Shown here piece after piece: positions 21,701 to 45,700 of a stretch of DNA of 64,000 nt. The number at the start of each line of letters is the position of its first letter. The stretch's first letter is position 1. This stretch comes from Styela clava. Lineage: Eukaryota. Below the pieces are notes generated by a model, which saw only the letters and a list, made by a program, of their open reading frames with translations, was not told the origin of the DNA and did not search any database. The stretch spans positions 7,192,001 to 7,256,000 of the forward strand of contig NC_135257.1 in NCBI RefSeq assembly GCF_964204865.1, written 5' to 3'. The position numbers and the translations under genes were made by a program.

Positions 21701-24700
21701 ATTTCGATTACCAAACTTCGAGCCATTCAAGAAACGACTCCGCCTACAACCAGGTTTAAAAAATCCGAAAGCGACTTCAGCTTCAAGAAAACTCAATTTT
21801 GATCACGAAAACTTGGGCGCGTGCAAGCCTTCATCAATTGTTTCATGTCTTAAATCAGTGACTTTCAGTGACTCCGGGTAGTTTGAAAATACAACTTCGC
21901 CAGTCATCATGCAAGACTAAAGACTCCACTGCTATGGTTGTATGTAAGTTTCAATAAAGAAAGATTGCGCGATTGAAAGCAGAAATATCGCTGATGAAAA
22001 TGGTTTCGCGTTTCTAAAAGAGCTAAATACTTTTGGTCCAGTCGAAACATTTTTCAAGACAATGTCATCAGAATTTTTTACTCAAGTTAATATTATGTTT
22101 CATTCGCGATAGGTCATCCATAATGTTTTGGGTGCGAATTACATCAAATTACATCGTCTGGGAACATTAATATTACATGTAGTCTTACACAAGATAGATA
22201 TTGTAAGTAGTACTATTACATAGTATGTGATGATTAGGTAAGCATGCAAAAAACACAGTCAGTTTAATGTGATGTTGAATCATTTATACTGGGTCATGGC
22301 CAAGGTTATAATAAAAATTTTAACTTTGAAATTAATCTTTTAGTAAATTTGAAATTGTACTTTCGGTTACATCATTCCTTCGTTTTCAAATGAAGTTGTT
22401 TTGTTCTTAGGATGGATTCATCAATTCGCAGCGCGTCCAAGTAATGCGTTTGTCCAAAAGTGCGTCGCAAGAAGTATGGATAATTTCCGAGGTTTCCACC
22501 AATGTTAAGTAGGTATTAACGCTGCTATTATTGGCGTTTGACTTCGACCAAAACCCATTAATCGTTACCAGTGTTTATATAATTACAAAACATATCACGT
22601 ACAATTTAAGGTAATAATGATGAAATATGAGCGGCTACATATAGGGGTGGGCACCGTTTTCGGACCAGGAGCCAAATTTTGCCCACCTAGACTGGAGGGC
22701 TTTGTAAGTGTGGCGAAAAAGTTACATTTTGTGAACAATATTTACAGTGTTACAAAAGCAAAAGTGGAAACAAACCTCGTGCCAAAACTTAATTTAATCG
22801 AAATCTCAACAAATTCCTTGAGCTATTTTTTAGATAAAACATCGAAATTTGGTTTTAGTTGGGTTATAACAGCATAAGACGGACCAGATTGAACTACCCA
22901 AAGGCCGGATTTGGCCCGGGGTCGGGAGCCGTATATTGCCCTTGTCAGAGCTACAATCTATTCTGTTTTGTTATCAATGACGTATGTAGTGTCAAATTTA
23001 GCAAGACACGAATCCTGAATTATTTTTTTACAGAAAAATACATTTCTCTAGAATAGATGAAATCTAAATCTATATCTGAATGCGGAAGACCTCATTTAAA
23101 AATCAGCATTCACGTGATCACTATAAGTAAATAAATTTATTTTTGAATATGAGACAATTGCGATCAACGCTCATTTTCGTTGTTTTGTTGGTACACAAAC
23201 AGCGACTCCCTAAAATGGCGTTTTCATTTTTATTTTAAAGGAATAAATCCTTTCCAGAGATGGAAGCGCATATGAAATCGGCGATGACATCAAACTGATA
23301 ATAATAGAGATAATGAATTTTACATGAGCTGTATAAATTTTAGTCAATATCCATTTAGATAAGTGTGACAGGGTTGAATAAAATCGTTACATTTCATCGA
23401 CCAAATTAAATATAGAAAAGGTATACATTACCCAAGAAAAATCGTAAAATCGATGAACAGAAATACGCCTTGCATGGGACGTAATTATTTTTTTATTAAC
23501 ACTGACCGAAAATAGCGAAAATGGAATTACAGGGTAATGTGCAATGCAAAATTGAATTAGCGGTTGAATGAAATGTTCGGTTTTACAATATAAGTATGGA
23601 AGCAAGAGATTGACTTTCGCAATTACAAAAATGCAAAACATCAAATTCGGCCCAATCATGATACGACTTGATTAAGACAAGTACATTACCCAGTCATGTG
23701 AAAACTACTTATGCCGCAAAGCAGAGTCAACAATGCCAGGGCAAAATATTTTTTCAGAGGGAAGCACGATTCCCATAAACAAGTATAATTCAAGGGGGTT
23801 TTGAGAGTCACGCGGGGAGGTCAATCATAAACACTTCAAATTGGAGAAAATATCTTGGATTTGTTGGAAATAAAATTTCCCATGTATGAATGCGCTAGTG
23901 ATGTCAATGCAGTACATAAGAGATCATAATACCTAGAACTATGGTAGACTTTCTAAATTCTAATAAAATTCAAATCCCGATGGGCTATTTGAACCAGTTC
24001 ATAGCGACGAAAAAAATCAACAGAAAACAAAATTATTGGGAAGACCAGCGGGATACCACAATATCAAACGTCAAATATAATCAAATTAAATTGTGTCGAA
24101 CGTTACCACGCCGAAAACAAGTTATAAAATGCGGTTCTGGGAAGAAACGAATTACTGTTGCCTTCCTTGTAGGGCGATTGGCGCAGAGCGAGGAACTAAC
24201 AATAGATAGCTATTACGAAGTACATCACTTTTAAGGACATTCTCCTACATTGTATTCATAAACACTAATGGGTTGTTTTTGAACTTACGTAGTTTATTTT
24301 ACTGGTAAATATTCAATACCTAATTACAACCAAAAGATCAACTTACACAAAATTGAATAAAAATCCTAACATTTAGTAGGAAGTGTGTCGAAACACAATG
24401 TATTGAAATTTTATGTATTGAATTTCCATAAAAAAAAAAAATTAAAAGTACTATATTCACATCAAATTGTTCATTCGAATGAATTATCAATGCTAACAGA
24501 CGCTCTATATTTTTATAGAGGTCAAGTCAACCAAAGTCAAATTAATGTCAACAAAATTTTAGTTAAGAGCGGACAAGATCAAAATTCGCTCATGCTTCTC
24601 CGAGTTTAAAACTCACCCTGGCTATCATATTGACGATCGCTTGGTATTTGTTCTCTTTTTTGACGATGTTATGCTGTTCAAGAATTTCTAAATTTTTGGC

Positions 24701-27700
24701 AATTCTTCGTTTCATGTCTTCGAGCGGTAACTTGTTTTCAGTCAATAAGGATCTCATTTTCAGCATGTTCTTTCCGTCTTCATCTGCAGCTTTCTTCTGT
24801 TTTTCACGCTCTTCTAGTTTTTGTATATTCGCCATATGTTCCTCTTGCTGCAAATGGAAAGATATATATTTTAAAAGGTGTTGGAAATATCCACAAGAGT
24901 TTTTGAAAATCCTAACCCCAAAATAAGTCGAATCAAACATATGGAGGTTATAGGTTTCCAAAGAATGAATATTTTCGGTTACACGAACTGAAAATTTACG
25001 ATTTCGAAATCAACTCAAATCAACAGGATCGAAGATTCGTGACCTGTGTTGCAAACATAGTTTTGATGAATGTTTTTGATATGCCACCATAATGTGATAC
25101 GGCAGTATATGTATGTATACATTATTAATATATACGAAATAAAGATAATAAAAGAAGCGATGTCAGCTGCACGTTGATGCAAGATTTTCACTTAAGTGGA
25201 CAAAAAGAAAAACATTATTGTGAATAGAAAAACCATCCATATATAATACAACAGGGGTGGCCAACACGTCGACCACGACTGACCGGTCATCGGCACGTCT
25301 CGAGTAGTCGATAGCGTCTCTGATGTTTTTGAACCAGTTTCATGCAGCGCCTGTCGTGTTTTCAAAACAGCACGAATAAAGTACTGAACAGTGTACATGC
25401 GCAAAATATGATACATTAGTGATTGCATATATAATAACGGTGGGCAAACCGCGGCTCGCAAGAGATTTTATGCGGCTCTTCTCGCTGACATTAATTATTA
25501 CCCAACTTTAACTAAGAGAATCTGTAGTGTAGCAGTTTTTTTTTAAATTTATCAAGCGGTTGAAGGAGTTTTCATCAATGATTAAGACATATTATGTTTT
25601 AGTATGGTTCTTAAAACAAAAAATTTTGCCCACCCCTCGCATATACAGTACTCGAGTCTGGGCACGCCTGATTGAGCATATTATTACGCAAAAATTGCAA
25701 GTATCGCCACTGCCAAGGTGAAATGAACGTGCGGATTATCGTGTGTGTTGAATGGAAACGGTCATTCAACAATCTCTGCAGTATGCGAAAGATGTTGTCT
25801 CGCTTCGAGAGTCGTGTGATGAATTATATTCGCAACAGTAGCATCAGATTGCCCATTTTTCTTAATTCCAAAGAGCGAAAAATCGGACTTGGATGAAATT
25901 GTAAACTAGATTAGATACTGAAGTTTGAGCAGTCATGTATCATTTATGGCTTGAAGATATTTATTTTCGCTGTCTAGATAACGGGGATACTTTGTAGGTT
26001 TTTTTTTAGAGAATATTCAACACTTGCGACGAAGAATAAGGCGGGGCGCCTCAGGATAGGATTTACATATTTATCCCTTCGATTTGAATTGTGTGATTCG
26101 AATAAATCTTAAATAAGTGATGAAAATTCACTCCGATTAGAATTACACAATCAAATTAACATACTAGATGCAACATAAAAATACGAATTTTGTGGCAGTT
26201 CTCATTCTTTTCTTATGTGTGACCTTATTACCGATCAGTCGATCGCGAACGATTTTGAATATTAAAGTCGATCACGGTCGTCGAATGCAGGTTGGTCATC
26301 CCTGATATACAAGATCTGGTCTAATGAGCAGTCAGAATTAATGGAGGCCTATGAATTTTTTTTGACAAATTTGGAACACACAAATGCTAATGGAAATTAT
26401 AATTTACTACTAGAAGTTAAGAATTCAAATGGGGCGATTCAAAGAGTTAAGATATTTACTTTATAAAGTATATATAATATGGGATGTTTACGAAAACAAT
26501 TTCAAAATTTAATATACATGACATCTGAGTTTAGATATCGTTCGGAACTCTTGCGCTGTTTAGTATGACAATTCAGCTTCGTCACATCGTTCCAATTCGC
26601 GTTGTTACGATGACGAACACCGCGAATCCAGGTCGACTCTTGTGTTTAAACCAGGTTAATAACGTCACTCGCGTGTGTGAGGCAAAGAATAGCACTTTAT
26701 ATTAGATGGCGTCGTCCTATGGAATGAATTTGTACTTTGAGCGTCGAGCGTCGGCGCCGGAAGTTGTATTTGAGCGTTGGACACTGAACATTACGTTTTC
26801 GTGATGTAAGTGTATGATTTGAAACAGGGCACGAAAAATTAGATGAAGATACTATTGCGTTGGCTTTCGTAATAGTTCATTAGACAGCTTATAACGTCAG
26901 GAGACCCGTAAGAAAAGCTATGGTCTACCTAGCTATTGATAAATATAAATAACGACAGTTTTAATGGGCAGATTTTTTTATTTATTTCCAGCGGCTTCAT
27001 GAATAGGATCGCATAAAAAAATGCAAGTAAATAACAGTAAAATGCTGCCCCGTAGCTGTAAGATTACGATGCGGTGCCCTAGGGAATATGGCGAAGTACA
27101 GATCGCGACTTATTACTGGGCCAAGTGGGTAAATTTAAATTGCCACTGCAAGTCGTGCTTATCGCTGGATGCTACTATATTGAGGCAAAGTAGAAGTAAC
27201 ACGCGGTGAGATATTTTTATGGGACTGATGAGACAACGCGTGCGGTTGCAATGACATTTCTCGACGAAATAATCTAATTGTAGATATAGTATAGCCCTAA
27301 TCACTTTAGTTCGTGATATGTGTCTGTGCGAGGATGGGGCTATAGGATTTTCATTTGTAGTAACGCCAAAAATATTCGTCTCGGGCCTTATGTAATAAAG
27401 TGAGAAGTGAGAATGCTTTTCGCAGACGGTGCGGAGGAACAGGTAACAAGTCAAAAATTTTAGGTTTGAATTCTCTGATTTTACTCTGGGATGTTATTTA
27501 ATTGGATATGTTATGATTAATCAGATATGGAGAAGGCTACACGAGCCAGAGCGCAAATACAATATCACTATCAAATTCTTAAGATTTATTATTTTCACAG
27601 AACGATCAAGGCATTCAAACAAGTACGATGAAATATTTAAGAATATTACTTCTAATCCTCTTTTGTGGCTGTAGTCTTCCTCAAGGCTTGGATTCCGAAA

Positions 27701-30700
27701 TGACTACAAATGGGTCTGAATATAACAAGAACGGCGACGCCGATTCGATCAAAAAACGTACGGAAGAGCTAGGACAAGCCAATGAAAAAGAAAAACTCGG
27801 ATTGCCCGTCACTACCGAACGAACTATACAGGCTACTTATTTAATACCAACGATGGCAACGCCTAACGCAGTTATACATTCAATGATCGCAGTACCTGCG
27901 ACAATGGACAGGCCGATTCCTACAATGTCGCCGATGTCACCGTCAGGATTACGAGGTAATTCAGATACCCCGAATACGGAGGGAAAGATGAATTCAACCA
28001 CGCATGTGCCTGATATTTTAGAAGTTGGTACAACTCCAGCAGCAAATCAAATCTCTCCTTCAAGCGGGAATACATCTAAAAGTAATGCATCCAAAAGTGA
28101 AGACAAATGGATAGAGGGCCTCTGTAGTTATCCAATTTATAACAATCGTGATGCCTGTATCGGTGACTTGGACTATTATACACAGCATTTGTCACTCTGT
28201 GAGTACAGGGGTGGCGTTGTGGTGTTTGCGATTTTCGTCGCATCACTTGGATTGACTATTATTCTTCTTAACTGCCTGTTACCTATTGTAGTATGGCAAA
28301 GATCTGACATGAGAACTCAGTATGATTATATAAAAGGTTAGTATCAGAAATAAATAACGCGAAGTGACTTTAATTTCGAAGACATGAATATAGCCTTACT
28401 TTGTGCAGCAATCGAGGGAATGACGAACGTAAAAATCTTGACGCCCTTTCAAACGCGAATTGAATACGAAGTGGATTGGATGAATTTTGCAAAAAATTGA
28501 GTCAACCTAATTATTCTAGCTTACGATTTCGGACAAATGATAAAATTGAAGTGTAATCCGAAAAAACACGCTAACATACTCGTAACAGGATTAGTACACA
28601 ACAACGAAGCATAAACGATACTTCCCATGAAATATATATATAAAATCTTATGTAATGACTTTTACAGTTTCTTTAGCATTTGCGGACATGATTCCTGGCT
28701 TTTTATTACTGACTGCCGTGATACCGAACATGGTTTGGGTCAGGCAACATAGCGAAAAACAAGTGGTAGAAATGCTGCATAATGATACAAACTCTCCTAC
28801 TGCAGTCATAGTTGGATCTTTGTTGACGATGTCGGGACAGGTAAAATGATTAATTTTGAAGAAATACTTTAAAAGTATATCAGAAATACACAAGTTTCAT
28901 TTAGATATGAAGAGTCAGTAGTATAAATTTGTATATTTTGATAAAAATATGTTTTAAATAATAAATGCATGTTCGGTTCAGATTATAGTAACCACTAACC
29001 CCAGAGTTACTATCTGCCATAGTTACCAGAATTGCCCTGAGAAGTTCAACACACCACTTTGGGTATGAATATAAACGTTCTGGAAGAAATAATCATTTAC
29101 TTAATAGGCCGCCAAGTTACATGACTTTATTAAATATGGATTTGGTAGGGAAAGGAAACCTTGCAAGTTGCAACTAATTTATTATTCATTATTCACTGAG
29201 GCAACAGCAATACAATAGCACCCTTGTTATTCCATAGCTATTTATTTACAGATTTAGATTCAATTATATCCAAATGTTCCTAATTAAATCCTAAAATCAA
29301 TTCAAATTTGATTACTACATTACCACGTCAAACGAAATATCAATTATTCGTCCATAACAGTCCAAAAACTGGTTTAAAGACGATTATATCAGCAAAAAAA
29401 CTTTCATTAAATAGTGGTTAAAGAGGGTCACAAGTCAAGATCTAAAATGAGCAATGAGCAAAGAGGTCAGAGTGAAGGTGAAGTTTAAGACCTCCAGTTG
29501 CGTTCTTGTAAAACTAAGGAACGTGAAACATAAATAGTTTACTGATTGATTACACAGAATGCAATACTTGATGCTGTGCTCGGAAGGTATGCTGAGGTGA
29601 ACGGTTAACCACCTCCGTCGCTATAGTATATTAAATCGTTCATATAGAGCCAATCATATATTCTGCGGTTTTTCTAAGCAAATCTGGTATGCAAAATTAA
29701 TTTAAACGCTCGCCATATGTAATATAGCTAACTATTATGTATATAATATAATGTTAACTCGTAATGATATCTACTTTTTATTTAAATGAGTACTATAATA
29801 AGGTTTCTATGGTGTGCTTTTCCGAGGGAAGAGGGACACTCATTTCACGGTACTTCGCACAAAACTCTGCGTTCGGTGGTATAATAGGAGATCAGTAAGT
29901 TCAAGATTTGCCCACAATACGATATTTAACACTGAAATATAGCCAAACGATGGCTTCTATATTTCATTGTCTGGGCATAATTGTCAAAAAAAAAAAATAT
30001 AGTCAATTGTAACGGAGTGACGCGAATTATAAAATGTGACAAATCATAGTAGACAATCAATTCAACGCTAATACACGAGAAAACCCTTTTATGTCTTGTG
30101 ATATAAAATCGTTCGTTCTTTTTCAGGCTTCTCTTCTACACCTCATGTTCTTGAGCATCGAGAGATTTATCGCCATCACGTGGCCATTTTGGCATTTACT
30201 GCGAAAAACTCGAACGATAATTGTGACTTTGAGTTTGTTATGGATAGCTTCATTTCTATGTGCATTTGTTCCAGGTGAAGTGTATTACATATTCGAAAAT
30301 TATTTGGAATGTATTAGGAATGGAATATTAGTGTCTGTAATGTCTGTTAACGAGACAAAATTTTGTCAATAAATGTACTCACTAAAATATATTATTTTAT
30401 CTATTTTCAGCCGAATTTCCGCAATACTTCGAATACATATTTCAACCATCTTTGTTAATTCACTACATGACGTTGAAAACAATAATTGGAACATCGGGAA
30501 AAGTAGAATACGGAATACATGGCCCTCTGTACACGTCGATTACCATGATTCTACCTTTTACAATTATGGTAAGGGTTCATTATGGAAACGAGCATAGTAG
30601 TGCGATAGAATGGGCAACATATATCAAACAATATTTACGACAGGGTTTCTCTAACAGAGCCCCGGTATTTTGAAAGGGCAGGGGCCGAAATGGGGCACAG

Positions 30701-33700
30701 ATAGATCATGGAGGTTTGAGAACCACTCTAGCATGGCCGAAATTGAATTTATAGAGATCTGGCTTTATTATTTATGGTATCCAAAAACTGACAATCTTTG
30801 AAATAATGAACTGGATAGTTATTCCAATGTCAGAATCGGCGACCAAACAAGAGGCGTTGGGCTTGTATGCTGTACCCTGATAAATAAGAAATACTAATAT
30901 GTTCTATCGCACAGTGTCAACTTTTGGAATAAAGGACCGGATAGTTTTTCTAATGCCGGAACGGCGACCGGGCGAGAGGCGTTGAGCTTGTACTGCTGTA
31001 CTGATAGATAAATAAATAAATAGGTAATACTAATATGTTCTATCGCGCAGTGTTTGATCATCTTTGAATTAATTACCCTGTGCTGTGTGTAAGCGTGGAT
31101 TTTGAGTTCTAAAACTATCTAAACCGATATTTCTTGTCATTTCAGTTGGTGGTATGCATTTTGACGGGTATTTCATCATACAGGAAATTGAAATCGAGAA
31201 CAAAAACATTTAGAGCCGGCGGAAAGTTTCACGCCGCTTCTGGCTCGGCTGTTGTCGACGGTAAACAGTCATCCACTGGCGTGGATGCAGAACCCCGACT
31301 TAAACCAACGACAAGCTTACGACAAAAATTGCGGCCCGAAGTGTCAGTATTCATTACTATTGTGACAATGATTATTGGATTCACAGTAACCATACGTAGG
31401 TTTATTTTTTAAAACAAATTATATGAGTGCCTTGTCCAATACTCTCTCTTGATATGCTAGAGCAGCTATACAGTGCCTTTGGAATGTTGATCGTTGAATT
31501 GAAAGGAATCATCACACAAATTCCTTTTATGTGATGGTATCAAATCAACTCGTATGTGTGGCATTAGTGGATAATCCTGACAGACAACATCATTTGGGAA
31601 TTCTGTTGTACTAAGCCACGGAACTTGATGAAAGCAATGTTTTCTTGAAAATACAGACAAATTATCAGGAGCATACTGGTTCTTTTAATTAGTCTTTTGG
31701 CGACCATCGACTACTTTTATGGATGATTACTTTTCAGTTGATTCGAATTAAGACCACAGATTCCCCGAGTCAACGCGATCACAAACAAAACAACACCTTA
31801 TACAAAAAATCCTAATTAAATTATATGCATTTTTAGTTCCCTTTGGGATCGTTTTGATCCTATTTGTAGCGAAGACGTTGACGTGTTCAACATACACTAC
31901 TTCATTCGTTCTTACATTCTACGGCGGCCTAGCTAACGGGTAAGTAATCTAGATTTGTATTCTATTAATCAAACTAAATCAACAGCGAAGTACATGCATA
32001 AATGAATATACCAATATAAATATGCGCTCCAGAAGTGTACGTACCAATATGGAGGGAACTGATTTTGTTCGACTACTCTACATCAAGTTGTGTAAAGCGA
32101 CGGAAGACTATGAGCAGGTGGTATATTTACTGGGCTGACACAGAACTCGTAATAGAACCAAAATAGGGAAAATCGGAATAAAATTATGGCCTTACCCTAA
32201 CCTGGTACACATACTACAGGAGTATAAATATTCATTCATTATCCTTTCAGCCTCATCAATCCGATAATTTACAGTTTTCGAGACGAAAGATTCAGAACAG
32301 CAGTTAAGAAGCTATTTAGCAAAAGATCAGAAAATAAGCCTATGGCGACCACGACTACCAACGCATCAAGTGGAAGTTGTAATTCTAAATTATGATAGTG
32401 CGGAATCTTATACAAGTTACAACCATTAAACGCAAAAAATTCATCACGTAAAGAAATGAAAAATCAAAGACCAAAATATTGAACATATTTGCTTGATATT
32501 TTTACTGAACGATGTTGCCTGAGCTCCGTAAAAGAAATGACACGCAGAAGTAGATTTGGGAGCTGCTGGTTTTAGTAACTCCGTATGAGGCGCAGAGTTT
32601 GGGCTAAGCAATAATCTTTTCGGAGTTGGAACCAGAGGACTTCAGACTCAGATGACCAAAAACGCTCCCCATGGATTTAGCTTGTAGGAAAATGCTACCG
32701 AATCATACATTTAACTTAGGTTTCCAGTGTTGAATAGAAAGTATACTTTTGAAAATGAGATATCAATAATAATCAAATGCCAATTAATGTGGTGACGACT
32801 GACGTGGTGTTCAGGGACTCGTTTTACTATAAAAGCAATTCTGATATTGATATACAATCAGAATACTGACAGTGTGTACCCTTTGAATTGCATATAATGT
32901 TGTTTTTATCGTGAAAATGGTATATTTCGTATTATGTGGTGAGGATAAATTTTGATGAATAAACCTCAATTTATTAAGTAAACAATAGCGTTTTTGGGTT
33001 TTTATTAACATACCCGGTGTACGTCATTCGTACAGGATTTGAGTATAATAGATACACTTAATGGCTGACACAAATCCTACAAATGAAAATACAACAGAAA
33101 GGTTTTTGGAATAGGGGTCAGAAAAGTAAAAATTACGAGTATATTAATTCTACGCTTTCAAGTGTTTAGTAAACAGATTACAAGTCAAAAAACGATCCGA
33201 TTATTCAGGCAGCGTTTGGGCTTGAAGTAAGGCATGAAGATTGGGGTTCTGACTGCGTTTACGGTACAAATGACATCATCTTCATGAGTGGTTCTCAAAC
33301 GGTGGGGCGCCCCCCACAAAAGGGGCGTAGACAATTTTTGAGGGAGCGTGGAGCTAATTGAAATGAAAATATTTATTAGATTTGATCTTGTACGCCTTAT
33401 TTCGGCGAATTCAAAATGGGAATTCCGCATCCTTCCCAAATCTTGATGAGGCATTCGGCAACATGCCTAAGACATTTATTTCAATATTTACGTTCCATCC
33501 ACGTATTTTCTGCGTGTTTTTGGATAATACATACTTTCGGCTCACTATTCGTTATTTGTAGCTTACTGTCAGCTAGTTATGTTTGAGTTGGGGCGCGAGA
33601 CTTGATAAATTCTGGCGGCTAAAGGGGCGGATTAAAAAGTTTGAGAACCACTATCTACGTGATATCATATTCTGGGTTTTCACAATAAAATACTGAGTGG

Positions 33701-36700
33701 TAGTATATTATGTACTGAGTTGGTGGTATCCGATACAGCCTGATCGAGGGAAGCCCAAATTATCCGCTTGTCGTCAGATTGGCCTTTGCTTATATTGCCA
33801 CTTAGCTTGACGATAAAAAAGGTGATCTATTTTGATCAACATCAGTCCGTATTCACCCTCCAAAGTTATTTGTGAATTGTGAGCGTAGCAGTATCTAATC
33901 ATTATTTTGTTTGAACGAAAACGAGTAATATGGCCGTTATAGCAAAAACTGGGAAAACAAGTGTCAACGAGCTCAATTTAAAAAAATTATATGTGGTGGC
34001 TCTATTTCACCGCAACGTGAATAATGCACAATCTTGCAGAATTGATCAATGAGTCCCACGTTTTTCAGTTTTCCTCATATAAACTGCTTTAAATTGTCCC
34101 AATCATTTGTCTACGATAAAGAATCGAGAATCGAGATGATCATACATGTTGCCTTTACTTTTAAGCACAACACATTCAAAAAATAACTATGGCGATGCGC
34201 TAAAGCTGTAAAACTGTTACGGCAATACCTTTGAAAATCAGTCATACCGACCCATATTTGTAAATGTATTGTCGCGAGAGAAAAGATGGCGAACGTGACA
34301 CGAGATAACTGAAGTAATTTAAGTCCATAGTTGAAGGAAAGCATCGAGGTGGGAGATTTTGATCGCCAGGACCCAGTTTAAACCACTATTAAATCCGATA
34401 AGGGTTGGGAGTACGAGTAGTCCCAATGTGGCACTATAAGTATTATTGCAATATCTATTTATGCACACAATCACACATTATGAAAAGTTCAAAATGAGTA
34501 AAACCGAGTTGCGCGTATACCTAGCTAAGGATTCTTAAAATGTTAAACAAATAACGAACATAGGATTTTCTGCATAGTGATTCAAATCATGCAAAGGTAG
34601 GAATATACAGGGTTAATGGGTTGGGAACCACTGCTCTAAATGCTCTATCATTGAGCTGTCTAATCAAGAAATCGACAATGTACTTCAGGCGGAAACTCAA
34701 TGTCTGAGTGTTTATTAATACGGACCGAATATTAGACCAATCAGAATGTAGTAATTACGGTAGTTATAAATTCATCAATTTCAACCGGAAACACCAAAGT
34801 GACCGACGCGTTGGAGTATGCTGTGCGAAACGCAAATCGGCAGACCATTTAAGAAAACGACGTGCCAAACAGCACGTTATAAATGTACAGCACGTTACAG
34901 ATGTCAATGCAGACGTGCTGTTTCATTAAAGCAATCAAACGTGTTGATAGAATAAATGTTGATCGTGGCGTTCATACCTGACAGTTCAGTTAGAATGAAG
35001 CATTGCAGCAGACAGGGGTTTACGTAAGCAGTCAATAATACCGGGTTTAGTGGGGCTTTATATTTTTAGTTGAACAGACCAAGCAGAGTTTTGCCCTGAG
35101 CCAAGCTTTATATTTTTAGTTGAACAGACCAAGCAGAGTTTTGCCCTGAGCCAAGAAGTTCAAGATGGCCCGACTTCTGACCAGAAGCCAGGGCGACCCG
35201 TCTAACTCCAACGAAGCCAGCGGGGTGATCGATGAAAGGTTATGGTCAATCAATATCTGTTGCAAAATTTCACTCCAATGTAATGCAATATGCAAAGTTT
35301 GAGAGTTTGCATCGTGTTCAGGATGCATATTCGCCGTCTAGGAAAAATAAGACGGCACGGCAAATCAAGGACCAACACATGAAATTTATTTAATTGGTTT
35401 AAACTTTACACAGATATTTCAAAATATATGTGATATACAAGTGATATTTCAAAAGTCACGCCCAAACAAAAATATGATCTGTTTTCAGCTCTGTTAAATA
35501 GCCCGAGTCAAACTTATAACTCAAAGACATTTAACACGAATTGGAGAGTCATCGGTACTGTGGGTAGCGCGTAAGATACGGTAATAATGCCAACGGAAAC
35601 ACGACATGTTAATATTTGTAATTTGGATTTGAAATGTTTCGTCTGTGTTGATGACGAATCTAACACTTTCAGGCGATTGTATAAAGCAGAAGTGGCCAAC
35701 CTGGTTTCGACCGCGATCGACTAAAATCTTCAAAATAGCTCGCGATCGACTGATCTGTAATAAGGTAATACACTAAAACGAATGAGTATTGAATATGCAG
35801 ATAACTAACTACACACATGCATAGAAAAATTCCACGGCTGCCAATAAGCACGGCTGCCAATAAGCTCGGCTCTGTGGGCGCATTCTTACTGAAATCGACA
35901 AAAAAATTTGTATTTTCATGTTCCATTCAATTTTTTGATTTGATTGATTATGTACTTGTTTATTTGTACCCGAAGAATTCCTCAAAAAACTTGCGTAATC
36001 ACAAGTAATCACGTATTATTTAAACAACAAAAAATGAATATTCTCAAACCATAAATGTTACATGACTAATAAAACAGTATCTAATTTACAATTTTCTCCA
36101 AGTCCGATTCTTCGCTCGCTTGGAATTAGAAAAAAATTGGGCGGGCATTCTGATGTCACTGCTACCGTTACGAATAAAATTTATCACACTACTCTTGGAA
36201 GTGGGACAATAACTTTTGCATATTGCAGAAATTATTGTAGGATGGTCTGTCAGGCAATCAAGACACGTGATATTCGGCACGTTCATTACTAAATTTTGGC
36301 AGCGGAGAAACCCGCATTTGTCACGTGATAGTATGCTCTATCGGACTTTCCCACCCTCAAATAGTGTATATACATTATACAGTACTGTATTCTTCCTGTT
36401 TTAATACACACAACAGGCGCTGCATGAAACTGGTTCAGGCCATTTTTTTGGAGTATGTTTTTAAATTCACTCAACATAAGACGTGATCGACTACTCGAGA
36501 TGTGGCGATCGATCAGTCGATCACGATCGACGTGCTGCCCATCCCTGGTATAAAGTAATGTAGATATTAACATACACTTTATCGTAATCCAATACAAAAG
36601 CGTTTAAATAAGACATCACTCGGAACGAGGCTTTGCACAATAATCTACTGATATGCTACTATTTATGGAATAAACGGTTTGGCATTGCCCGAACCACAGT

Positions 36701-39700
36701 TTTGCTGGTCCCGTGGTCAGATTATATCAATGCATGACTGGACTACAACATTTCCATATAAATAATCTATGACCACCAAGTTATCTATAGATGATACTTC
36801 CACGAAGCTTGAAAATAAAAAGAAGTGACGTCAGCAGTCAGTATTTTCAAGAATATTTTTTCTATATGTCAGAGATGCGGTGTCATTTGGTGATGAACGA
36901 TCGACAAAAATAGACGCTTTATTAGTCGATTTGTATGAAATAATAGGGGCGATGTGGTTGAAATTGAAGTCCATTAGATAGCCTTGGGCGCAGAAGTGAG
37001 AGACTCTTAACTTACAACACTTAGCATTTCAGATCAGCCTAAAATTGGCTTGACGTGATATTTTAGCTTGTAGGCAAATTATTCAGGATAGACGTTAATT
37101 ATAACGTTCGACTCGAACAGATAATAGGACGCAGAACTATAATCTAAATTTCAGTAGATTGTTTTGAAAAGAAAAATATTGAGTACTGAAGAGTTTAGCG
37201 TAAAACTAGTGAAGTTGGTTTTCTAACAGCATGGACCTGATAAATTTAATGATTGAATAATTTGTGATCGATGTATACTATCTTTCTATGACACAATGAT
37301 AAAATGCGCTAATAACGTGACAGAAGTTAATTAATAAAGCTAAGTTTCAAGTAACGAACAGTACCACATAGGAGACGGTGTGACGGATTAGTATATTTGG
37401 TACAGAAATAGGTTTATGTATTTATTCCGTTGATGTTGAATTCAATTCGTGGTCAGATTAAATTTTGTTTTTCATTTTTAATATCAATATAGATTTATTC
37501 GCGAAACAAGCTCCCAAAAAAATTAACATTCAAACCCATCTGTATAGAAGAAACGAGCACTACCGCAAGTGCACGTGCAAGTGCAATTAATATATAATAA
37601 GCAGAAAATTTTACAAGGTTTTCCGGAAATGAGGTGGTAACTACAGGAGAATAATACAAGGCGACGCGTTGATTAGGTTAATAATAGCAAGAATTTGTTT
37701 TCATTCGATAATTGTGTCGTTTGTCCTCGATGGAGTGCGAAATTACTGTACTACATGTGTCAATCCAAAACTGAACACATAAGTGTATTGGTAGATATAT
37801 TAAAGAAATATTGGGAGAGCATTTCATAATAAGACATAAAGATAGACCGGTGACAGACTGGATTTGTCATGTCTACGAACTTATTTAATTAAAGTCATGT
37901 CTACGGACTTATTTAATTAAATTAACTTACTTATTGCCTACAATAAATGAGTTTTAATAGCTAATCGAATAAATTACAATACGAATAACATTTTAAAAAA
38001 TATCGAGTATATTTTAAATTAGTTCATGTCCAGCAAAGAAAATTGTCAGAAATTGTTGCATCCAGTAATGAAAATAACTTTACATAGCATAGCATTCTGT
38101 CACTGATAGTATATTGTTAGTTATAGTGTTAAAGTATATATAATACAGAAGTTGGGATGAAGATTTTTTTCTTATTCTCTATTTTTACAATACAAGTTTA
38201 CAATTGCAAGTTGAAGGAAGTCTATTTTCGTCTGACCATGCGATGTCAAGTGCTCAAAATGAAGAAATTTTGAGATGAAAATATTCTTCATAGTTCAAAA
38301 ACCAAGAATTTGCTGTACCGAATATAATTGATTCTAATATTGATTCGTTATGGGCATCCCTGCATACTCTTATATAACATTCAAAACATGTTGCCTATAG
38401 GAAATTCGGTAATTATCGCTTTGCGCAACATTCATCCCACGCATGCAAGTTATTTGTCGTGTTATCGGCGCTGAGCTGTTAGGCCAACACAGAGTCATGC
38501 GGGAAGGATTAACAACTTAATTAAAGTATTTTTTCTGAATTAAGATTTAATTAGCAATCTAGAGTTTATCTCTTTTCGAATCCTGGCGTAAACTGAGCCT
38601 GAATACAGTTTAATGGTTATGCTCTTATTTCGATTAGTTTTCCTGGTTGTGGTATGTGGAAGTAATGTTACAATTGGAGTGAAAAACACCGAAGGTGATT
38701 TACTTGCGGAAGACAATTTCGGCTTTATAGACAATGTCAACCCTGACAACAATGGACATGTATTGGACAATACCGTGAATGGGATTGTAAATTCGCCAAT
38801 GATTTTAGATGACAACATTGTGGAAGACACGGAAGAGAGTTCTTCAAATGATCTGCTTACACTCGACATGGTGGAGCAAAGCGCGGTTACTTCAAATATC
38901 ATGCTGCAACCGAGCACACCAAATCCAACTATGTATGGGTATGGTATAAATCCATTTTACAGTGAGGTACTAGATTTAACATTGGCACCAGAAATCGATG
39001 TCGTACTTCCCGATAGCTTTGCCATGACAAATGAGGATCACCCGAGCAAGCTGAGGATGGGAAATGAGGTGCAAATAGACCTGAAACAGGCATTGCCGAT
39101 TTTCAATGAAACGACGCAAAAACCAGAAACAACAACAAAAAAAGACAACTCTCGCGTACTGGGCCTCCGACCGTTTCACGGAATTGCGATACCACCCGGT
39201 GTCCCTATTCCACCCGGTGTCCCTATTCCACCCGGTGTCCCTATTCCACCCGGTGTCCCTATTCCGCCCGGTGTTCCTATTCCACCCGGTGTCCCTATTC
39301 CACCCGGTGTCCCTATTCCACCCGGTGTCCCTATTCCACCCGGTGTCCCTATTCCACCAGATGTGCCAGACCATTCAAGCACCTCAACAACGACAAAATC
39401 AACAACGACCACGGTAACTAGCACGAATTCCAGATCAATCGCACCGCATCCACCAATACCGAGACTGCTACAACCGAAAAAACCAACAGAACGTGCAAAA
39501 CCTAAAACTTCAACAACCTTAAAACCGACGACTATAAAAAGCAAACCATCCATACCTACGAAAATAACGCCAACAAAATCGACAATTCAAGCTGGCACGC
39601 CAATGGATTTTCAAAGAGGGATGATACCAGTAGTAGATGTAGACTCTGGGCCGACAACTTCATCACAAAAAATCGAGCATACAACATCAAACATTACGAC

Positions 39701-42700
39701 ATTCGAAGCCGATAACTCAAAAACCATAGTGATTGAACTAAACCCAATAGCAGGACGAGATATATTTCATAACACAAGTCTTATCGAGAAATTTAATAAC
39801 AGTGATAATTCGGATACGCGTGATCAAGTTACTGTAGTTTATCGGATGTGTGGATACCCTTCTATATGCGATCAAGAAACTTGCATATCACTTGACATAA
39901 GTAGTGATACCTTGGAAGAGTGTGAAATACGGGGAGCGAAAGCAGGATTCGTTTTTGTCGTAATCATTTTATCACTAGCGATTATAGTAGGGAACAGTTT
40001 GCTACCGTTGGTACTGTGGAGAAATCGAGAATTGAGAAGTCATCACAATTTAATGAAAGGTGTGTAATAATGCTGTTTTGAGGGAGAAAGACTTGGAAAT
40101 ACTTATTAATAACCTGGAAATAACGACAACAATGTGCAGAAATAACGTTAATTGTATCACGCAAATTAACATGCATACACATCACGATTCCAGATAAATT
40201 TATCATTCATTATACCTAAAATGAAGTCGTGATAAAACATGTACAAGTAATAGATCATTTGTGTGGGGAAATACGTCAACAAGCATTATGATGTTGCGTT
40301 TTTTTAATTAACCAAAGGCTTTGATTAAAAATAATCGAATCGCGATAACATATTGCATATAAATAAATATGCAAATTACCAGTGACGGGAATATCACCAA
40401 CATAGCCATATTGAAAATATTTGGGTATATCTCTAAATTAGGAATAATAGAATCGAGACAATAAATTTGACTTTTCTTGGCTATAAAACGCCAACAACAC
40501 AGTTTTTTTACGATTTCAGTTATGTCGGGTAGATTGGCTTGGAAAGACCCCAAAATAAGCAAACAGATATGGAAGTGTCCCAAACTGTTAGTATTAGAGT
40601 TATGTTGGAGATTGTCTCGCAAAACGACCGATGAACGAAATATAAAACTTTAATGACGTATAAGTAATATTTTAAAATTCGCTTTGGCGAGAAAGCCGAT
40701 TGAAGTAAATATGATACCGGACATTTTTAATCGGAATTTCATTACAATTCAGTTTCACTTGGATTTGCTGACATGATAACTGGTTTGATTCTCCTGTTCT
40801 CCGTTATTCCCAATGTTATCCGTACGATGCAAAGCACCGAACAACAGTTAGCTGAAGAGGATAGAGATATGACGAATTCAGCCCAAGCTATAATAGCCGG
40901 TTCAATGCTAACTTTATCAGCACAGGTTCGAAAATGATTTATAACTAGAAATAAACTACGAAACGTTGGCCTAATTGAAAGTATGAATCTAATAACCAAT
41001 AAAAAAAAAACGTTTTCTGACATTTGAAATGATAAGACTTTTCGATTTCAAAACATCATTAATTTCAAAAATAACAATTTGCTTTGCAAATATGGTTTAC
41101 CCAAAACCATACTTTTGGATCATTCTAAAAGTCATAGTATGTTTAATTCTCTTATTTTTTTGAGTGATTTTTCATATAAAAATATACCATGTTCTTGCGA
41201 GATTTTCATTGAGACAAATACAGATTACTGCGAGAATTTTTGCAAACAGTCAAAAACGAGTATTGATGAACCATTGTCAAAGGCAGCTACTCGCGAGTCG
41301 CGACCGGGTCGTAATAAGAGTCGATTTATGCATTATTGTCTCGCATTAGAAACATTTGTAACACTACTCGATTCCGATCAATTTCATGTTTACTTTTCAC
41401 AGGCTTCATTGTTTCACTTGACATATCTCAGCGCTGAGCGTTTTGTTGCAATTAAATGGCCTTTGTGGCACCGAGTGAGAGGACCAAAGTCTCTTTCATC
41501 GCAAATTTTGTCGGTGTGGGCAGTTTCTATCATAGTGTCTTTTCTACCAGGTAAGAGATGAAACCAAATATATATTTACATAACACAGTCGCTGTAGAAA
41601 TTAAATAAGGCATGGTGGATCAAACGTTGTAATACGATCAATAACGAATATTCTCCAGCGGTATATTCGGTATAGTGCGTTCGAAATTTCCGTAATATTT
41701 GTCATAAATCTTGAATATTTCGATTCAACTAGTATACGTCTCATTATACCTGTGAACTGTGATGATGACTTCGCAGAAAATTATTTTCGAGTTTTTACAT
41801 CAAATACGATATGACTACTTTTAATATGATGACGTATACTATCTGAATATAGAACGCTGTAATTTGCCTAAAATAATAATTAATTATTAAATAATTTCGT
41901 CTTTGATGATGGGTATATTCCCGGAAGTGTTTTCGACACAAAGTTTCGATTTTAAACAACCGTAAAATCTATTTTGTGAAAGATGACATGAAAGCGAACT
42001 TATAAGTGCGTCAAAATTACGTTTTAACTTTGATTGTTTTGCGTCACAATATAGGTAGACTCAGACCGCCAGATCAATGAATTACATAAGTAACTTTCAT
42101 ACATTACAGCTGCTTTCAAGTATCAATTCTCGTTTCGATATTTGCCTGTATTATTCGTCTACATAATGACAGCAAATGGATCCGAAACCAATGCGGAAGG
42201 AACGGCCTATATTGTGATAACCATGGTGATACCATATATAGCCACGGTAAGATGATAATTTAAGCCATATATACCGGTATTTCGATTTAAAATCTTAATC
42301 TTAAAAAGTTAATTTTTTGTGTTAAAATACGCAAAACCTAATAAAATGATGTGTTCTAACTATCCAGATAGGAATTACATTAGCCTCAAATCATTCTGAT
42401 GGATTTCAAAAAGGGCAGGTTGTTGTTGTTTACTTTCGAAACGCTTATGCTTCGATTATTTTAAATTATTTATGGCATTTAAATGATGTGTTATTATATA
42501 AACTTGCAATAAAAAACAAATTAAACCCCGCGTCACCAAAAGCAATATAGAGAAACCAGGGCATGAATATTACCTCCGCCATCAGGACATTAATAACTGT
42601 ATAGTATAAACTTTTCACGTGAAGACTTTCACATGCTAAAGCGATTAATATATTACCTATTCGTTACCAGATAACATTTACGGCACTAACCGGGGTAGTA

Positions 42701-45700
42701 GTATGGTGGAAGATGAAATCAACGGCACATATGAAGCGTTATTCCACAAGAAATCATCGAACTACGAACGGTGGTATAGGATCCCAGACCACTTCCGGGT
42801 TCAAACTAGCGAGTAACGGACGATATCAATGGGATGATGCCGATAACACAAAACCGGAACTAAAGCCGGAAGTAGCGGTGTTGAAGACCCTAACGATTAT
42901 GATTGCTGCCTTTAGCATAACACTACGTAAGTTTACTTTCGTAGCTGCGAGTGACCCATTGCATATTAATAATATATTTGTATATCACTATTTTACTGCC
43001 AGTATTTCAACCGAAAGATTTGAAAATTCTGTGAATTAACCCTTCTTTATTGCATTTTCAGTTCCTTTCATAATAGTTGTGATTCTATTCTACGGTGAAC
43101 AACTGGACTGCGTAAACTACTCTATGCCATACACAATTGCCTTCTACGCCTGTATGTCGAACAGTTTTGTAAATGTATTGATATATACAGTACGAGACCA
43201 AAAATTCAGAAACGGTTTACATAATGTCTTTCGACGACGAGGGGCTAGTCAAATATGGAGCTCTAATTCCAATCAAGGAAAAAAAGGAATGACGATGAGT
43301 ACGAGTATCGAACTCACACCCCATCCAATACAAATGGAGAATGGAGAAAAATTTTCCAGTAGAACATCTGGCAAAGAAAGATGGGAAAGAGCCTTGGTAG
43401 GGATGTGAAGGGTAAGAAGGAGAACAAGACAGAAAAATGAAGAGCGGGATACATTGACACGGCACCGCGATGTAAAAAAATAATCTGATCTACCGGTCTC
43501 AAACTAATGAATCAAACAGATATGATCCCAACATTTAAACAAGGTACAACCAAGGTACATCAGTTTAAAAACAAGTCTACAGACATAATGAATTGAATTA
43601 GTGAACTAATTGTACAGTATTCTTTCATTTTGAGATATTATAACAATCAGTATGTGCATTGAATATTTTTTTGTACAGAATCCAACATTCAGTGTTATAT
43701 TTTATCAAGTACAGCGGTAAAATAATCTATTGCTGCTTTTTTTTATTTTTTTTTTTATCAAGATCTTTTCAATTCATTCTTTTTAATAATTTTTTTACGA
43801 TTTTATTGCACATAAATGGAGATTTTCGAATAAAAGTATGCAAAATGAGAGCAAATATGATCTTGAATTGTCATGAAGAGCATCGTAGTAATGTAATTAA
43901 ATAGTAGATATATATATATATATTCATTAGGATACAGTTAAAACCTATATGTAAAAGAAATTTTAGGAGAAGGTGACAAAACCTGATTGCTATTCAGTTG
44001 ATAGATAGATATTCATTCAAATCCTGTCATTACTCAACAATCAAAACAGAAAACACAATTCGAATTCTCAGGACATATACAATCGACTAATACCAGAATT
44101 AATAAGTACCTAGGTTGGAGGGACCAATCGGTCACCAAATTGAAACAATTCTCCTTGCATGAATAAGTCGATAGACGTCTATACAGTGTAATTATACCAT
44201 TTATAAATCATGTCAATTTGTTGTTGCTATAATTATCATGCTATCGTTATATAATACATACAGACTTACTTCAAGTTCAACATTGCTAACATTTCGGGTT
44301 CGCAGGTTTGAGGATGAGTGGCCGTGGTTCGCTATATGATAAAACAGTCTCATCACTTTTCCTCTCCCCCGGAATGAATATGTAAATCCTATCCTATTTG
44401 ATTGAATCTATGTTACAAACCTGATGATCTGTTGCTTCAGTTTCCAATAGTTGAACAAGATTGTCGCCAGGTTGCACTCGAATCACGTCTATTATCATTC
44501 TCTTAGTTCTGAAAAAGTAAAAAGAAGACTATAAAACAAACCATAGCTCTTGAGTTTATGGGACAACTGGAACCTTGGGTGGCCAGAACCAGTCAAAACC
44601 TAATAATCTACTATTCCAAACACGCTCTAAAACAGTGGACGGCAAACTTTATGTACTACTGGGCCAAACATGCACATTGATGGTAGCGTGCGGACCATAT
44701 TGGTTTATAAACAATCGCCACCTTAAACTTCATATCATGACGTTCTTATTACTCATCGATCTTAAGATCGGTAAGTATGTTGATAGGTATTTGTCTGTCT
44801 GTATGTCTGTTTGTCTGTGTGTTAGATGCACGCGATATCTCACGAAAGCGATGTTGAATCCTGCTCCAAATTTTGCATGTGCAGCCATCATAGCTCGGAT
44901 CAGAAGCCTATAGATTTTGGATGGATTATGTCTTATAATTAGCGAGTTATTAATTAATTAGTGATGGGACACACGGTGTCACTATGGAGTAAGACCGCTG
45001 TTTTGGGGGATCCCCTAACCTTCGATCGATAAGTCTACGGTTTCTAACCGATATTCTAGTTTCTGTGTTAATCACAACCAACGGTGGCAAGTAATTGACA
45101 TACAACTGACAATTTTTGCTTATTCTAATTACCGGTACTACAAAACAAACCCGTAAAACAGCTATTGTTACGACATACATCCGTGGTGCGCAGATGATAA
45201 TAAGTTTACAAGCAACTTTTGTTTTTTTAAGCATTAAAAGTGAGGTTTTGGGGGCCACAAAAAGGAGGGAGGGGGCACGAGCCGCAGTTTGTCAACCCCT
45301 TTCTCTGAAATAAGGTTTTGTAAAGGAATATCAAGTATATATTCTAAACTGGATCCTGCACCCTTTGGGAACCGCTGTTTTATACAATAATTTACCTGAG
45401 TAATACATTTCTCACATCACCATCATCATCTTCCTTTACTTCTATTCTGTTCAGCAATGTTAGTGACACTTCAGTATTACCCAGTTGTTCCAACTGTTTC
45501 TCATCTTGTTCACCTTCACCTGAAGCTTGTGAAGTATCACCACCTGATGAAAGATAAGTAAACCATATGGAAAGTCAAGGCAGTTGGAAGATAAAATGGT
45601 AAAACTCAAAGATACTTTTTAAACCACAAAATAAGTTTAAATATGCATAATTTTTTAATAGTCATTAATAAAACTGACAACTAAATCATAGAATGAGCAT

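What the first reader, a model, noticed from the sequence alone, without database searches (positions are those of the whole stretch)
24848..44420. Two paralogous multi-exon orphan GPCR genes nested antisense in one 19.6-kb IQGAP intron
Seen: IQGAP exon 44421-44508 joins exon 24617-24847 in frame (...EATDHQ|QEEHMAN...). The intron between them is 19,573 bp, while other IQGAP introns here run from ~80 bp to 5.4 kb. It holds two complete intron-containing GPCR genes on the opposite strand with matching exon sizes and phases, i.e. a tandem duplication inside the host intron. Established: mammalian IQGAP1 scaffolds GPCR/arrestin/MAPK signalling. Inference: antisense nesting may force reciprocal expression through transcriptional interference, or mark a co-regulated receptor-scaffold module.
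Basis: partly seen in the sequence, partly recalled or inferred. Interest (0 to 1): 0.8.

Follow-up and report, generated by a model that had tools for sequence, protein, structure and literature searches.

The report
Two receptor genes inside IQGAP intron
In the sea squirt Styela clava, one 19.6-kb intron of the IQGAP gene really does hold two transcribed orphan receptor (GPCR) genes on the opposite strand, but this is an ordinary nested-gene arrangement, and the two genes are old, distant relatives rather than a duplication made inside the intron.

Summary
RNA contigs from four runs (three studies) join IQGAP exon 44421-44508 directly to exon 24617-24847, so the intron is 19,573 bp and the main transcript has no exon inside it. 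Two intact class-A GPCR genes lie in the intron on the + strand. GPCR-A has 7 coding exons and 561 aa, and matches RefSeq XP_039271368.2 of Styela clava exactly. GPCR-B has 6 coding exons and 835 aa, and one RNA contig shows all five of its introns spliced.

- The first five introns share position and phase, and exons 2 and 3 have equal sizes. B lacks the sixth intron, which all six other family members have.
- The family has at least 7 members, all on chromosome piece C9.
- A is 72-76% identical to two copies about 360 kb away but only 39% identical to B. A and B never group together in 1000 bootstrap trees. A duplication inside the intron is therefore not the likely origin.
- Nothing links the receptors to IQGAP in function.

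Opposite-strand nesting of paralogous GPCRs is already known, for example human MED12L with P2RY12 and P2RY13. Unchecked notes from this scan report other antisense nested receptor genes elsewhere in this genome. Interest is low.

The parts
44421..44508 (-). IQGAP coding exon upstream of the host intron (..TKRMIIDVIRVQPGDNLVQLLETEATDHQ). Acceptor ag is at 44510-44509 and donor gt at 44420-44419.
   Evidence: Sequence. RNA contigs in four runs cover it and leave it exactly at 44421. The apparent extension to 44512 is a 4-nt ambiguity, because the upstream exon ends in TCAG.
24848..44420 (-). Host intron of IQGAP, 19,573 bp, phase 0, gt..ag on the minus strand.
   Evidence: The loose end at 44421 equals window 24818-24847.
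24617..24847 (-). IQGAP coding exon downstream of the host intron (QEEHMANIQK...KYQAIVNMIAR). Pfam RasGAP_C starts at residue 42 of this exon.
27628..28336 (+). GPCR-A exon 1: signal peptide, Ser/Thr/Pro-rich stalk, three-Cys module and TM1. It ends in phase 1.
   Evidence: It equals residues 1-236 of RefSeq XP_039271368.2 (P0032).
28668..28840 (+). GPCR-A exon 2 (173 nt; TM2, ECL1 and the start of TM3).
30127..30274 (+). GPCR-A exon 3 (148 nt; TM3 with the ERF motif, ICL2 and TM4).
   Evidence: (7tm_1, 34.7 bits).
30411..30568 (+). GPCR-A exon 4 (158 nt; ECL2 and TM5).
31146..31395 (+). GPCR-A exon 5 (250 nt; ICL3 and the start of TM6).
31837..31939 (+). GPCR-A exon 6 (103 nt; TM6 end, ECL3 with its Cys, and TM7 start). 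It is followed by the phase-2 intron that B lacks.
32251..32395 (+). GPCR-A exon 7 (NPIIY, helix 8 and tail; stop codon at 32393-32395).
38613..40059 (+). GPCR-B exon 1 (1447 nt): signal peptide, a long Pro/Thr/Ser-rich ectodomain that includes the 18-bp x 9.3 repeat at 39192-39358, the Cys module and TM1.
   Evidence: RNA contigs cover 38604-39221 and 39329-40057. An orthologous 474-aa ORF exists in another species (P0001).
40753..40925 (+). GPCR-B exon 2 (173 nt).
   Evidence: The splice is seen in the X1 contig.
41403..41550 (+). GPCR-B exon 3 (148 nt; ERF motif; 7tm_1, 32.6 bits).
42110..42246 (+). GPCR-B exon 4 (137 nt).
42671..42926 (+). GPCR-B exon 5 (256 nt).
43062..43408 (+). GPCR-B exon 6 (347 nt), equivalent to exons 6 and 7 of the other copies fused. 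It carries NVLIY in place of NPxxY. The stop codon is at 43406-43408, and an AATAAA lies at 43829.

Best explanation
This is an ordinary host/nested gene arrangement in the ascidian Styela clava.

Shown:
- The single-copy IQGAP gene runs on the minus strand for about 60 kb. It removes a 19.6-kb phase-0 intron just upstream of its RasGAP_C region.
- Two independent transcription units lie inside that intron on the opposite strand, each spliced.
- They are two members of a small family of at least 7 genes: A-F lie within about 380 kb and G about 4.5 Mb away, all on the same chromosome piece.
- The family encodes orphan rhodopsin-class GPCRs with a signal peptide, a mucin-like stalk and a three-cysteine module before TM1.
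- Named relatives of the family come only from tunicates.
- A and B are old, distant paralogues. A's closest relatives are a tandem pair 360 kb away.

Inferred:
- Each gene has its own promoter.
- A and B came to lie in the intron (or stayed there) as part of the local, DNA-level spread of this gene cluster around IQGAP. They did not arise by one duplication inside the intron.
- The intron is long because it carries about 9.6 kb of guest genes plus repeats.
- Host and guests are functionally unrelated. Any effect on each other would be generic head-on transcriptional interference.
For: - IQGAP splice 44421->24847 is seen in RNA contigs of 4 runs from 3 studies.
- IQGAP identity and single copy.
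- A 1591-nt RNA contig in X1 shows all five GPCR-B introns as GT..AG on the + strand, at exactly the modelled sites.
- The GPCR-A model equals RefSeq XP_039271368.2 exon for exon. Nine transcriptome-sized runs from 3 studies hold 0.21-0.47 of the A gene's words; its exons make up 0.35 of the stretch.
- Pfam 7tm_1 scores 77.8 bits for A's protein.
- The 7 family members all lie on C9 and share their exon structure.
- Identities are A-E 71.7%, A-F 75.8%, E-F 90.2% and A-B 38.8%. In the NJ bootstrap, (A,(E,F)) scores 100% and {A,B,E,F} scores 0 of 1000.
- Nucleotide similarity between A and E/F is confined to exons, so the duplication is not recent.
- The CH domain position places copies C and D outside IQGAP.
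- Literature: the nested gene most commonly lies in an intron in the opposite orientation and arises by DNA insertion. Human MED12L hosts P2RY12 and P2RY13 (PMC3933685). About 10% of Drosophila genes are nested (PMC3814207).
Against: - Splicing of A was not seen directly in reads here. It rests on the RefSeq model and on word shares, and run X2 also holds unspliced pieces of the region.
- The deep branching order of the family is weakly resolved (58-80% bootstrap) and the tree is unrooted. An ancient origin of the whole family inside the intron, followed by dispersal, cannot be excluded.
- Functional independence from IQGAP is assumed, not tested.
- Across the four runs, B is best covered where the IQGAP contig depth is lowest. 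That would fit reciprocal expression, but with four contig-only runs, whose depth the tool says cannot rank genes, it carries no weight.
Confidence: 0.85

Rival explanations
1. One reading: A and B arose from one tandem duplication that took place inside the IQGAP intron.
For: - A and B are adjacent, in the same orientation, 6.2 kb apart, inside the same intron.
- Their first five introns share position and phase, and exons 2 and 3 have identical lengths.
Against: - The shared exon structure is common to all 7 family members, so it does not mark A and B as a pair.
- A is far closer to E and F (72-76%) than to B (39%). B is about equally distant (39-46%) from every copy.
- The split {A,B,E,F} appears in 0 of 1000 bootstraps.
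- B lacks intron 6.
- No nucleotide similarity remains between the A and B halves of the intron apart from a dispersed repeat.
Confidence: 0.12
2. One reading: the nest is a selected regulatory unit. Either head-on transcriptional interference forces IQGAP and the receptors into reciprocal expression, or the locus is a co-regulated receptor-scaffold module.
For: - The orientation is head-on.
- B's likely poly(A) site (AATAAA at 43829) lies only about 0.5 kb from the IQGAP exon.
- Interference between nested genes has been reported in Drosophila (PMC5174743).
- In the four runs, B contigs are fullest where the IQGAP contig depth is lowest.
Against: - Spliced B RNA and correctly spliced IQGAP RNA coexist in library X1.
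- Five of the seven family members are not in IQGAP, so the family does not depend on this host.
- Contig depth cannot rank genes, as the tool itself states.
- A study in mammals found no expression divergence between nested genes despite interference (PMC8467205).
- The link between IQGAP1 and GPCR signalling is a mammalian protein-level fact and says nothing about gene position.
Confidence: 0.08
3. Artefact: the 19.6-kb 'intron' is a misassembly or haplotig insertion that placed a GPCR cluster between two IQGAP exons.
For: RefSeq held two near-identical loci for A (LOC120345758 and LOC120345858). This shows that an earlier assembly carried allelic duplicates in this region.
Against: - In this assembly only one copy of A exists.
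- The B gene is colinear with a spliced RNA contig over 3.9 kb.
- Four genome-sized runs hold 0.77-0.93 of the words of the A region, although all come from one sample and may be the assembly's own source.
- There are no N runs in the window.
- More family copies lie just upstream of IQGAP, so GPCR genes belong to this neighbourhood.
Confidence: 0.03

Closest known systems
Human MED12L hosting P2RY12 and P2RY13 (different-strand nested gene structures; table in PMC3933685)
   Same: Two paralogous class-A GPCR genes lie inside a large, unrelated host gene on the opposite strand. Host and guests have no known functional link.
   Different: - The host is a different gene, and the guests belong to a well-characterised receptor family with known ligands.
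- The Styela guests have 6-7 coding exons and long mucin-like ectodomains, and they are orphans.
- Here both guests are shown to sit in one and the same intron.
Mouse Gpr21 in the Rabgap1 intron between exons 13 and 14 (PMC4813635); also CASK/GPR82 and FYCO1/CXCR6 (PMC3933685)
   Same: An orphan or chemokine GPCR is nested in an intron of a large gene for a cytoplasmic signalling or trafficking protein.
   Different: Each case has a single guest. According to the paper, Gpr21 lies on the same (positive) strand as its host.
LRRTM genes nested in alpha-catenin (CTNNA) genes (PMC3933685)
   Same: [quoted passage not shown] One family member (LRRTM4) lies outside the host but nearby, as copies C and D do here.
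   Different: In vertebrates the host/guest pairs were duplicated together and are conserved across jawed vertebrates. Here the host is single-copy and conservation is untested.
NF1 intron 27b with OMG, EVI2A and EVI2B (from my own knowledge, not checked here)
   Same: Several opposite-strand genes lie in one intron of a RasGAP-family host gene.
   Different: The guests are unrelated to each other and are not GPCRs.

Membership tests
Opposite-strand nested (host/guest) gene structure | The guest lies wholly within one intron of the host, flanked by coding exons that are spliced to each other. | tested here: met
   RNA contigs of 4 runs join 44421 to 24847. A spans 27628-32395 and B spans 38613-43408, both inside 24848-44420.
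Opposite-strand nested (host/guest) gene structure | The guest is its own transcription unit on the other strand. | tested here: met
   B: a spliced contig has five GT..AG introns read on the + strand, and its start is covered from 38535/38604. A: the RefSeq protein is identical to the model and RNA-type runs hold 0.21-0.47 of its words, but its splice joints were not seen directly.
IQGAP (host gene) | CH domain, WW, IQ motifs, RasGAP-related domain, RasGAP_C and the C-terminal RGCT domain, in that order. | tested here: met
   - CH domain at C9:7268476-7268721, minus strand.
- WW and IQ motifs in the frames, read by eye.
- The GRD exon hits only IQGAP2 and IQGAP1.
- RasGAP_C.
- The RGCT domain hits IQGAP1/3/2.
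Rhodopsin-class GPCR (Pfam 7tm_1) | A match to PF00001 above its curated cut-off across seven helices. | tested here: met
   A's RefSeq protein scores 77.8 bits over profile positions 2-260. B was tested exon by exon only: exon 3 scores 32.6 bits against a cut-off of 30.5. All other B exons align to A and to the family.
Rhodopsin-class GPCR (Pfam 7tm_1) | Canonical microswitches: D2.50, E/DRY, CWxP, NPxxY and the TM3-ECL2 disulfide. | tested here: inconclusive
   Read from the family alignments.
- LAxxD is present.
- E/DRY is ERF (DRF in copy G).
- P6.50 is kept, but there is no CWxP.
- NPIIY occurs only in A, E and F. The others have NVLIY (B), NAIIY (C), NVIIY (D) and NVVIY (G).
- I saw no Cys at the usual TM3 position.
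Helix numbering was assigned by eye, not by a structural alignment.
Named GPCR subfamily (amine, lipid, peptide or other): the 'orphan' claim | A clear closest relative among characterised receptors. | tested here: not met
   - The best PDB match of A is 43 bits (D1 dopamine receptor), followed by beta-2, octopamine, relaxin, M3, GPR119 and MC5R at similar scores.
- The exon 2 profile finds nothing in the PDB.
- RefSeq names differ from copy to copy.
Tandem duplicate pair | The two neighbours are each other's closest relatives. | tested here: not met
   A-B is 38.8%, against 72-76% for A-E and A-F. The split {A,B,E,F} appears in 0 of 1000 bootstraps.
Tandem duplicate pair | Same orientation, adjacent position and shared exon structure. 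| tested here: met
   Both genes are on the + strand, 6.2 kb apart, and five introns share phase. The structure is shared by the whole family, and B lacks intron 6.

The most novel reading that the evidence does not exclude
The IQGAP intron is the birthplace, or a conserved home, of this tunicate-specific GPCR family. On this reading the nest is kept by selection across ascidians because head-on transcription makes receptor and IQGAP expression mutually exclusive in particular cell types, for example sensory or neural cells.
Probability: 0.06. Interest if true: 0.55.

Novelty: new member of a known kind. Interest (0 to 1): 0.22.

Why it matters
It matters little on its own. The arrangement adds a clean, RNA-verified example of two intron-containing paralogous GPCR genes nested antisense in one intron of a chordate invertebrate. 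It also shows that GPCR-B, which is transcribed and spliced, has no protein record in the 5.8-billion-protein collection searched, so it may be missing from the public annotation.

The receptor family itself is the more interesting object, but other findings on this same stretch deal with it. The family is known from named records only in tunicates. Its members are orphans with a mucin-like stalk, a three-Cys module, no CWxP and a variable NPxxY.

The nest would gain weight only if it proved to be conserved in other ascidians or tied to reciprocal expression.

Tried and rejected
1. Junction by homology. Pfam RasGAP_C starts only at residue 42 of exon 24617-24847. No solved structure covers the region. 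The junction was therefore settled with RNA contigs instead.

The other collections hold only viral, metagenome or prokaryotic DNA. This was not tested.

3. ESM Atlas.

5. No joined model. I made no joined spliced model and searched with none. B was searched exon by exon only. For A, the full-length RefSeq protein returned by a tool (P0032/P0003) was used instead. The family tree was built from distances summed over separate per-exon alignments, not from a concatenated sequence.

6. Non-coding RNAs. Rfam at gathering threshold found nothing in the window.

7. Recent segmental duplication between A and E/F. Rejected, because nucleotide similarity is limited to exons.

8. Copies C and D also inside IQGAP. 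Rejected. The CH domain and the likely first exon lie at 7.268-7.270 Mb, while C starts at 7.288 Mb.

9. Link to the S. clava 'Mc4r-like' receptor of PMC11430673. That receptor is a 389-aa protein from a different transcript, and I saw nothing linking it to this family.


Full report
**Where we are.** The window is G000:C9:7192001-7256000 of a 376.8-Mb genome. The organism is the ascidian Styela clava. RefSeq protein XP_039271368.2 (LOC120345858 isoform X1, 561 aa) is recorded on a contig of 23,815,600 bp, which is the length of C9. It contains every exon peptide of my GPCR-A model, in order and without a mismatch. The window has no N runs and a G+C content of about 0.35.

**The host gene and its intron.** The minus-strand frames carry the IQGAP series of motifs: a WW domain, IQ motifs, the RasGAP-related domain, RasGAP_C and the C-terminal domain.
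- One GRD exon matches only the IQGAP2 and IQGAP1 GRD structures (E 4.9e-22 and 1.1e-19).
- A C-terminal exon matches the RGCT domain of IQGAP1, 3 and 2.
- Pfam RasGAP_C begins at residue 42 of exon 24617-24847.
- The CH domain lies at C9:7268476-7268721 on the minus strand. A likely first exon lies about 1 kb further upstream.
- The gene therefore spans roughly 60 kb, and it is single-copy.

Exon 44421-44508 ends CATCAG|gtttgt, and exon 24617-24847 begins ttgcag|CAAGAGG. The frame reads ...ETEATDHQ|QEEHMAN.

Neither Pfam nor the PDB covers this part of the protein, so I tested the junction with RNA. I laid four transcriptome-sized runs from three studies on window 38520-44519. In each run the IQGAP contig (up to 6,750 nt) fits 44421-44512. 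Before 44421 it continues with TTTTTGTATATTCGCCATATGTTCCTCTTG, which is exactly the + strand of window 24818-24847. The intron of 19,573 bp is thus spliced out as one piece in the main transcript, and no additional constitutive IQGAP exon lies within it. The apparent 4-nt overhang to 44512 arises because the upstream exon ends in TCAG, the same letters as the intron's end.

The other IQGAP introns in the window are about 5.4 kb or less, judged from the spacing of exon-bearing frames. I did not map every IQGAP exon.

**The two guests.** Stop-to-stop frames of 27.4-32.6 kb and 38.4-43.7 kb match each other piece by piece. I fixed the splice sites by reading the sequence.

| Gene | Coding exons (+ strand) | Length |
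|---|---|---|
| GPCR-A | 27628-28336, 28668-28840, 30127-30274, 30411-30568, 31146-31395, 31837-31939, 32251-32395 | 1686 nt, 561 aa |
| GPCR-B | 38613-40059, 40753-40925, 41403-41550, 42110-42246, 42671-42926, 43062-43408 | 2508 nt, 835 aa |

All introns are GT..AG. The first five introns share the phases 1,0,1,0,1. Exons 2 (173 nt) and 3 (148 nt) are equal in size. A has a sixth, phase-2 intron just before NPxxY, which B lacks.

For B, one 1591-nt contig of run X1 shows all five introns removed, as GT..AG on the + strand and at exactly these sites. A second contig covers 38604-39221. The gap between the two contigs is the 18-bp x 9.3 coding repeat at 39192-39358.

For A, the evidence is indirect. 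It rests on the identical RefSeq model and on nine runs of 53-79 Mb of contigs, from three studies, that hold 0.21-0.47 of the words of the A gene. A's exons make up 0.35 of that stretch. Four of these runs are shown to be RNA by their spliced IQGAP contigs.

B's first exon has an orthologous 474-aa open frame in another, unnamed species (P0001). Overall identity is 34%, but the Cys module and TM1 are nearly identical.

No protein containing B's first exon is on record in the 5.8-billion collection or among the representatives. B therefore seems to be missing from the public annotation.

**What the receptors are.** A's protein matches Pfam 7tm_1 at 77.8 bits over the whole profile. B's exon 3 alone passes the cut-off.
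- The best solved relatives of A score only 43 bits or less. They are a mixed set: D1 dopamine, beta-2, octopamine, relaxin, M3, GPR119 and MC5R receptors.
- A profile of exon 3 finds class-A receptors in general.
- A profile of exon 2 finds nothing.
- A profile of the family-specific Cys module plus TM1 finds only 30 proteins in 1.84 billion at E <= 0.001.
- The named hits are from S. clava, plus one weak match in Clavelina lepadiformis. The rest are unnamed Logan contigs.
- RefSeq calls the S. clava copies 'uncharacterized', 'LPA receptor-like' then 'NPY2R-like', 'dopamine D2-like', '5-HT2B-like' and 'alpha-1A adrenergic-like'. That spread is what automatic naming gives for orphans.

'Orphan' is therefore fair.

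**Is it a duplication inside the intron?** No. The genome holds at least seven family members, all on C9.

| Copy | Location on C9 | Strand |
|---|---|---|
| A, B | inside the IQGAP intron | + |
| C | 7287876-7294532 | - |
| D | 7310123-7316557 | + |
| E | 7582581-7587549 | - |
| F | 7590947-7595002 | - |
| G | 11706795-11713902 | + |

C and D lie upstream of IQGAP, not inside it. All copies share the exon structure. All except B have intron 6, so B most likely lost it.

Summed over separate per-exon alignments (219-315 columns), identity is as follows:
- A-E 71.7%, A-F 75.8% and E-F 90.2%.
- A-B 38.8%, the lowest value for A.
- B is 39-46% identical to every other copy.

Neighbour-joining on these summed distances, resampling columns within each exon, gives (A,(E,F)) in 1000 of 1000 replicates. 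The split {A,B,E,F} appears in none. The deeper order is weak (58-80%) and the tree is unrooted.

Nucleotide similarity between A and E/F is confined to exons at 70-82%, so that duplication is not recent either.

The simplest reading is a local gene cluster that spread around IQGAP, with two of its old lineages lying in the long intron. An origin of the whole family inside the intron cannot be excluded without outgroups.

**Function of the arrangement.** Nothing found here ties the receptors to IQGAP. Spliced B RNA and correctly spliced IQGAP RNA occur in the same library (X1). B is less complete, or absent, in the runs with deeper IQGAP contigs. However, the tool itself warns that contig depth cannot rank genes, and four runs are too few.

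B's likely poly(A) signal (AATAAA at 43829) lies about 0.5 kb from the IQGAP exon. If both genes are active in one cell, the polymerases meet head-on. That is an inference, not an observation.

**Comparison with what is known.**
- Nested genes most commonly lie in an intron of a larger gene in the opposite orientation, and are thought to arise by DNA insertion (PMC3933685).
- About 10% of Drosophila genes are nested (PMC3814207).
- Human MED12L hosts the paralogous receptors P2RY12 and P2RY13 on the other strand. CASK hosts GPR82 and FYCO1 hosts CXCR6 (table in PMC3933685).
- Mouse Gpr21 lies in a Rabgap1 intron (PMC4813635).
- Reports on interference between nested genes disagree (PMC5174743 and PMC8467205).
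- I found no paper on a nest in IQGAP.
- Unchecked notes of this scan mention two more antisense nests of receptor genes elsewhere in the same genome.

**Limits.**
The work was redone from coordinates only, without typing those letters again.
B was handled exon by exon throughout.

**Verdict.** The duplication story is not supported, and functional coupling is unsupported. This is a new example of a known kind of arrangement, of low interest.

Noticed in passing
window 38613-43408: GPCR-B is transcribed and spliced (X1 contig), yet no protein containing its first exon is on record in the 5.8-billion collection or among the representatives. The only match is an ORF from another species, P0001. 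B is probably missing from the public S. clava annotation.
   Followed up: partly
window 43062-43408, compared with copies A and C-G: Only B lacks the phase-2 intron just before the NPxxY motif. All six other family members have it. This looks like an intron loss in the B lineage.
   Followed up: partly
window 44358-44398: A 41-nt element next to the IQGAP exon occurs at least 837 times in the genome with 3 mismatches or fewer, on both strands. It turns up inside many unrelated RNA contigs with different flanks. It is likely the end of a MITE- or SINE-like repeat.
   Followed up: partly
window 25252-26305 and 35693-36547: Two copies of a dispersed repeat of about 1 kb (73-84% identical) lie in inverted orientation on either side of GPCR-A. 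Related copies lie in intron 1 of family copy C (L015:7025-8186) and in L010.
   Followed up: no
window 39192-39358: An 18-bp x 9.3 tandem repeat (97% matches) encodes (PPGVPI)n in the ectodomain of GPCR-B. The RNA contigs of X1 break exactly there.
   Followed up: partly
window 40538-40799 and 42506-42876: Run X2 holds low-depth contigs that run across intron/exon borders of GPCR-B without splicing. They could be B pre-mRNA, IQGAP pre-mRNA or some genomic DNA in the library.
   Followed up: no
window 31146-31395 (GPCR-A exon 5): RefSeq isoform X2 of A (494 aa, P0033) leaves the isoform X1 frame after '...RPEVS' and ends before TM6-TM7. This splice variant could not encode a full receptor.
   Followed up: no
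family alignment (A-G); window 32251-32395 and 43062-43408: The Pro of NPxxY is present only in A, E and F (NPIIY). The others have NVLIY (B), NAIIY (C), NVIIY (D) and NVVIY (G). All copies have ERF or DRF in place of DRY, and none has CWxP.
   Followed up: partly
P0031 (Clavelina lepadiformis, 1340 aa): This protein has seven Sushi repeats followed by a 7tm_1 domain. The stretch just before and into TM1 weakly matches the family's Cys-module profile (E about 1e-3). It may be a distant relative with a different ectodomain.
   Followed up: no
P0003 versus P0032: RefSeq held two loci for GPCR-A (LOC120345758 and LOC120345858) whose proteins differ at a few residues. In this assembly only one copy exists, so the pair probably reflects allelic duplication in an earlier assembly.
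   Followed up: partly
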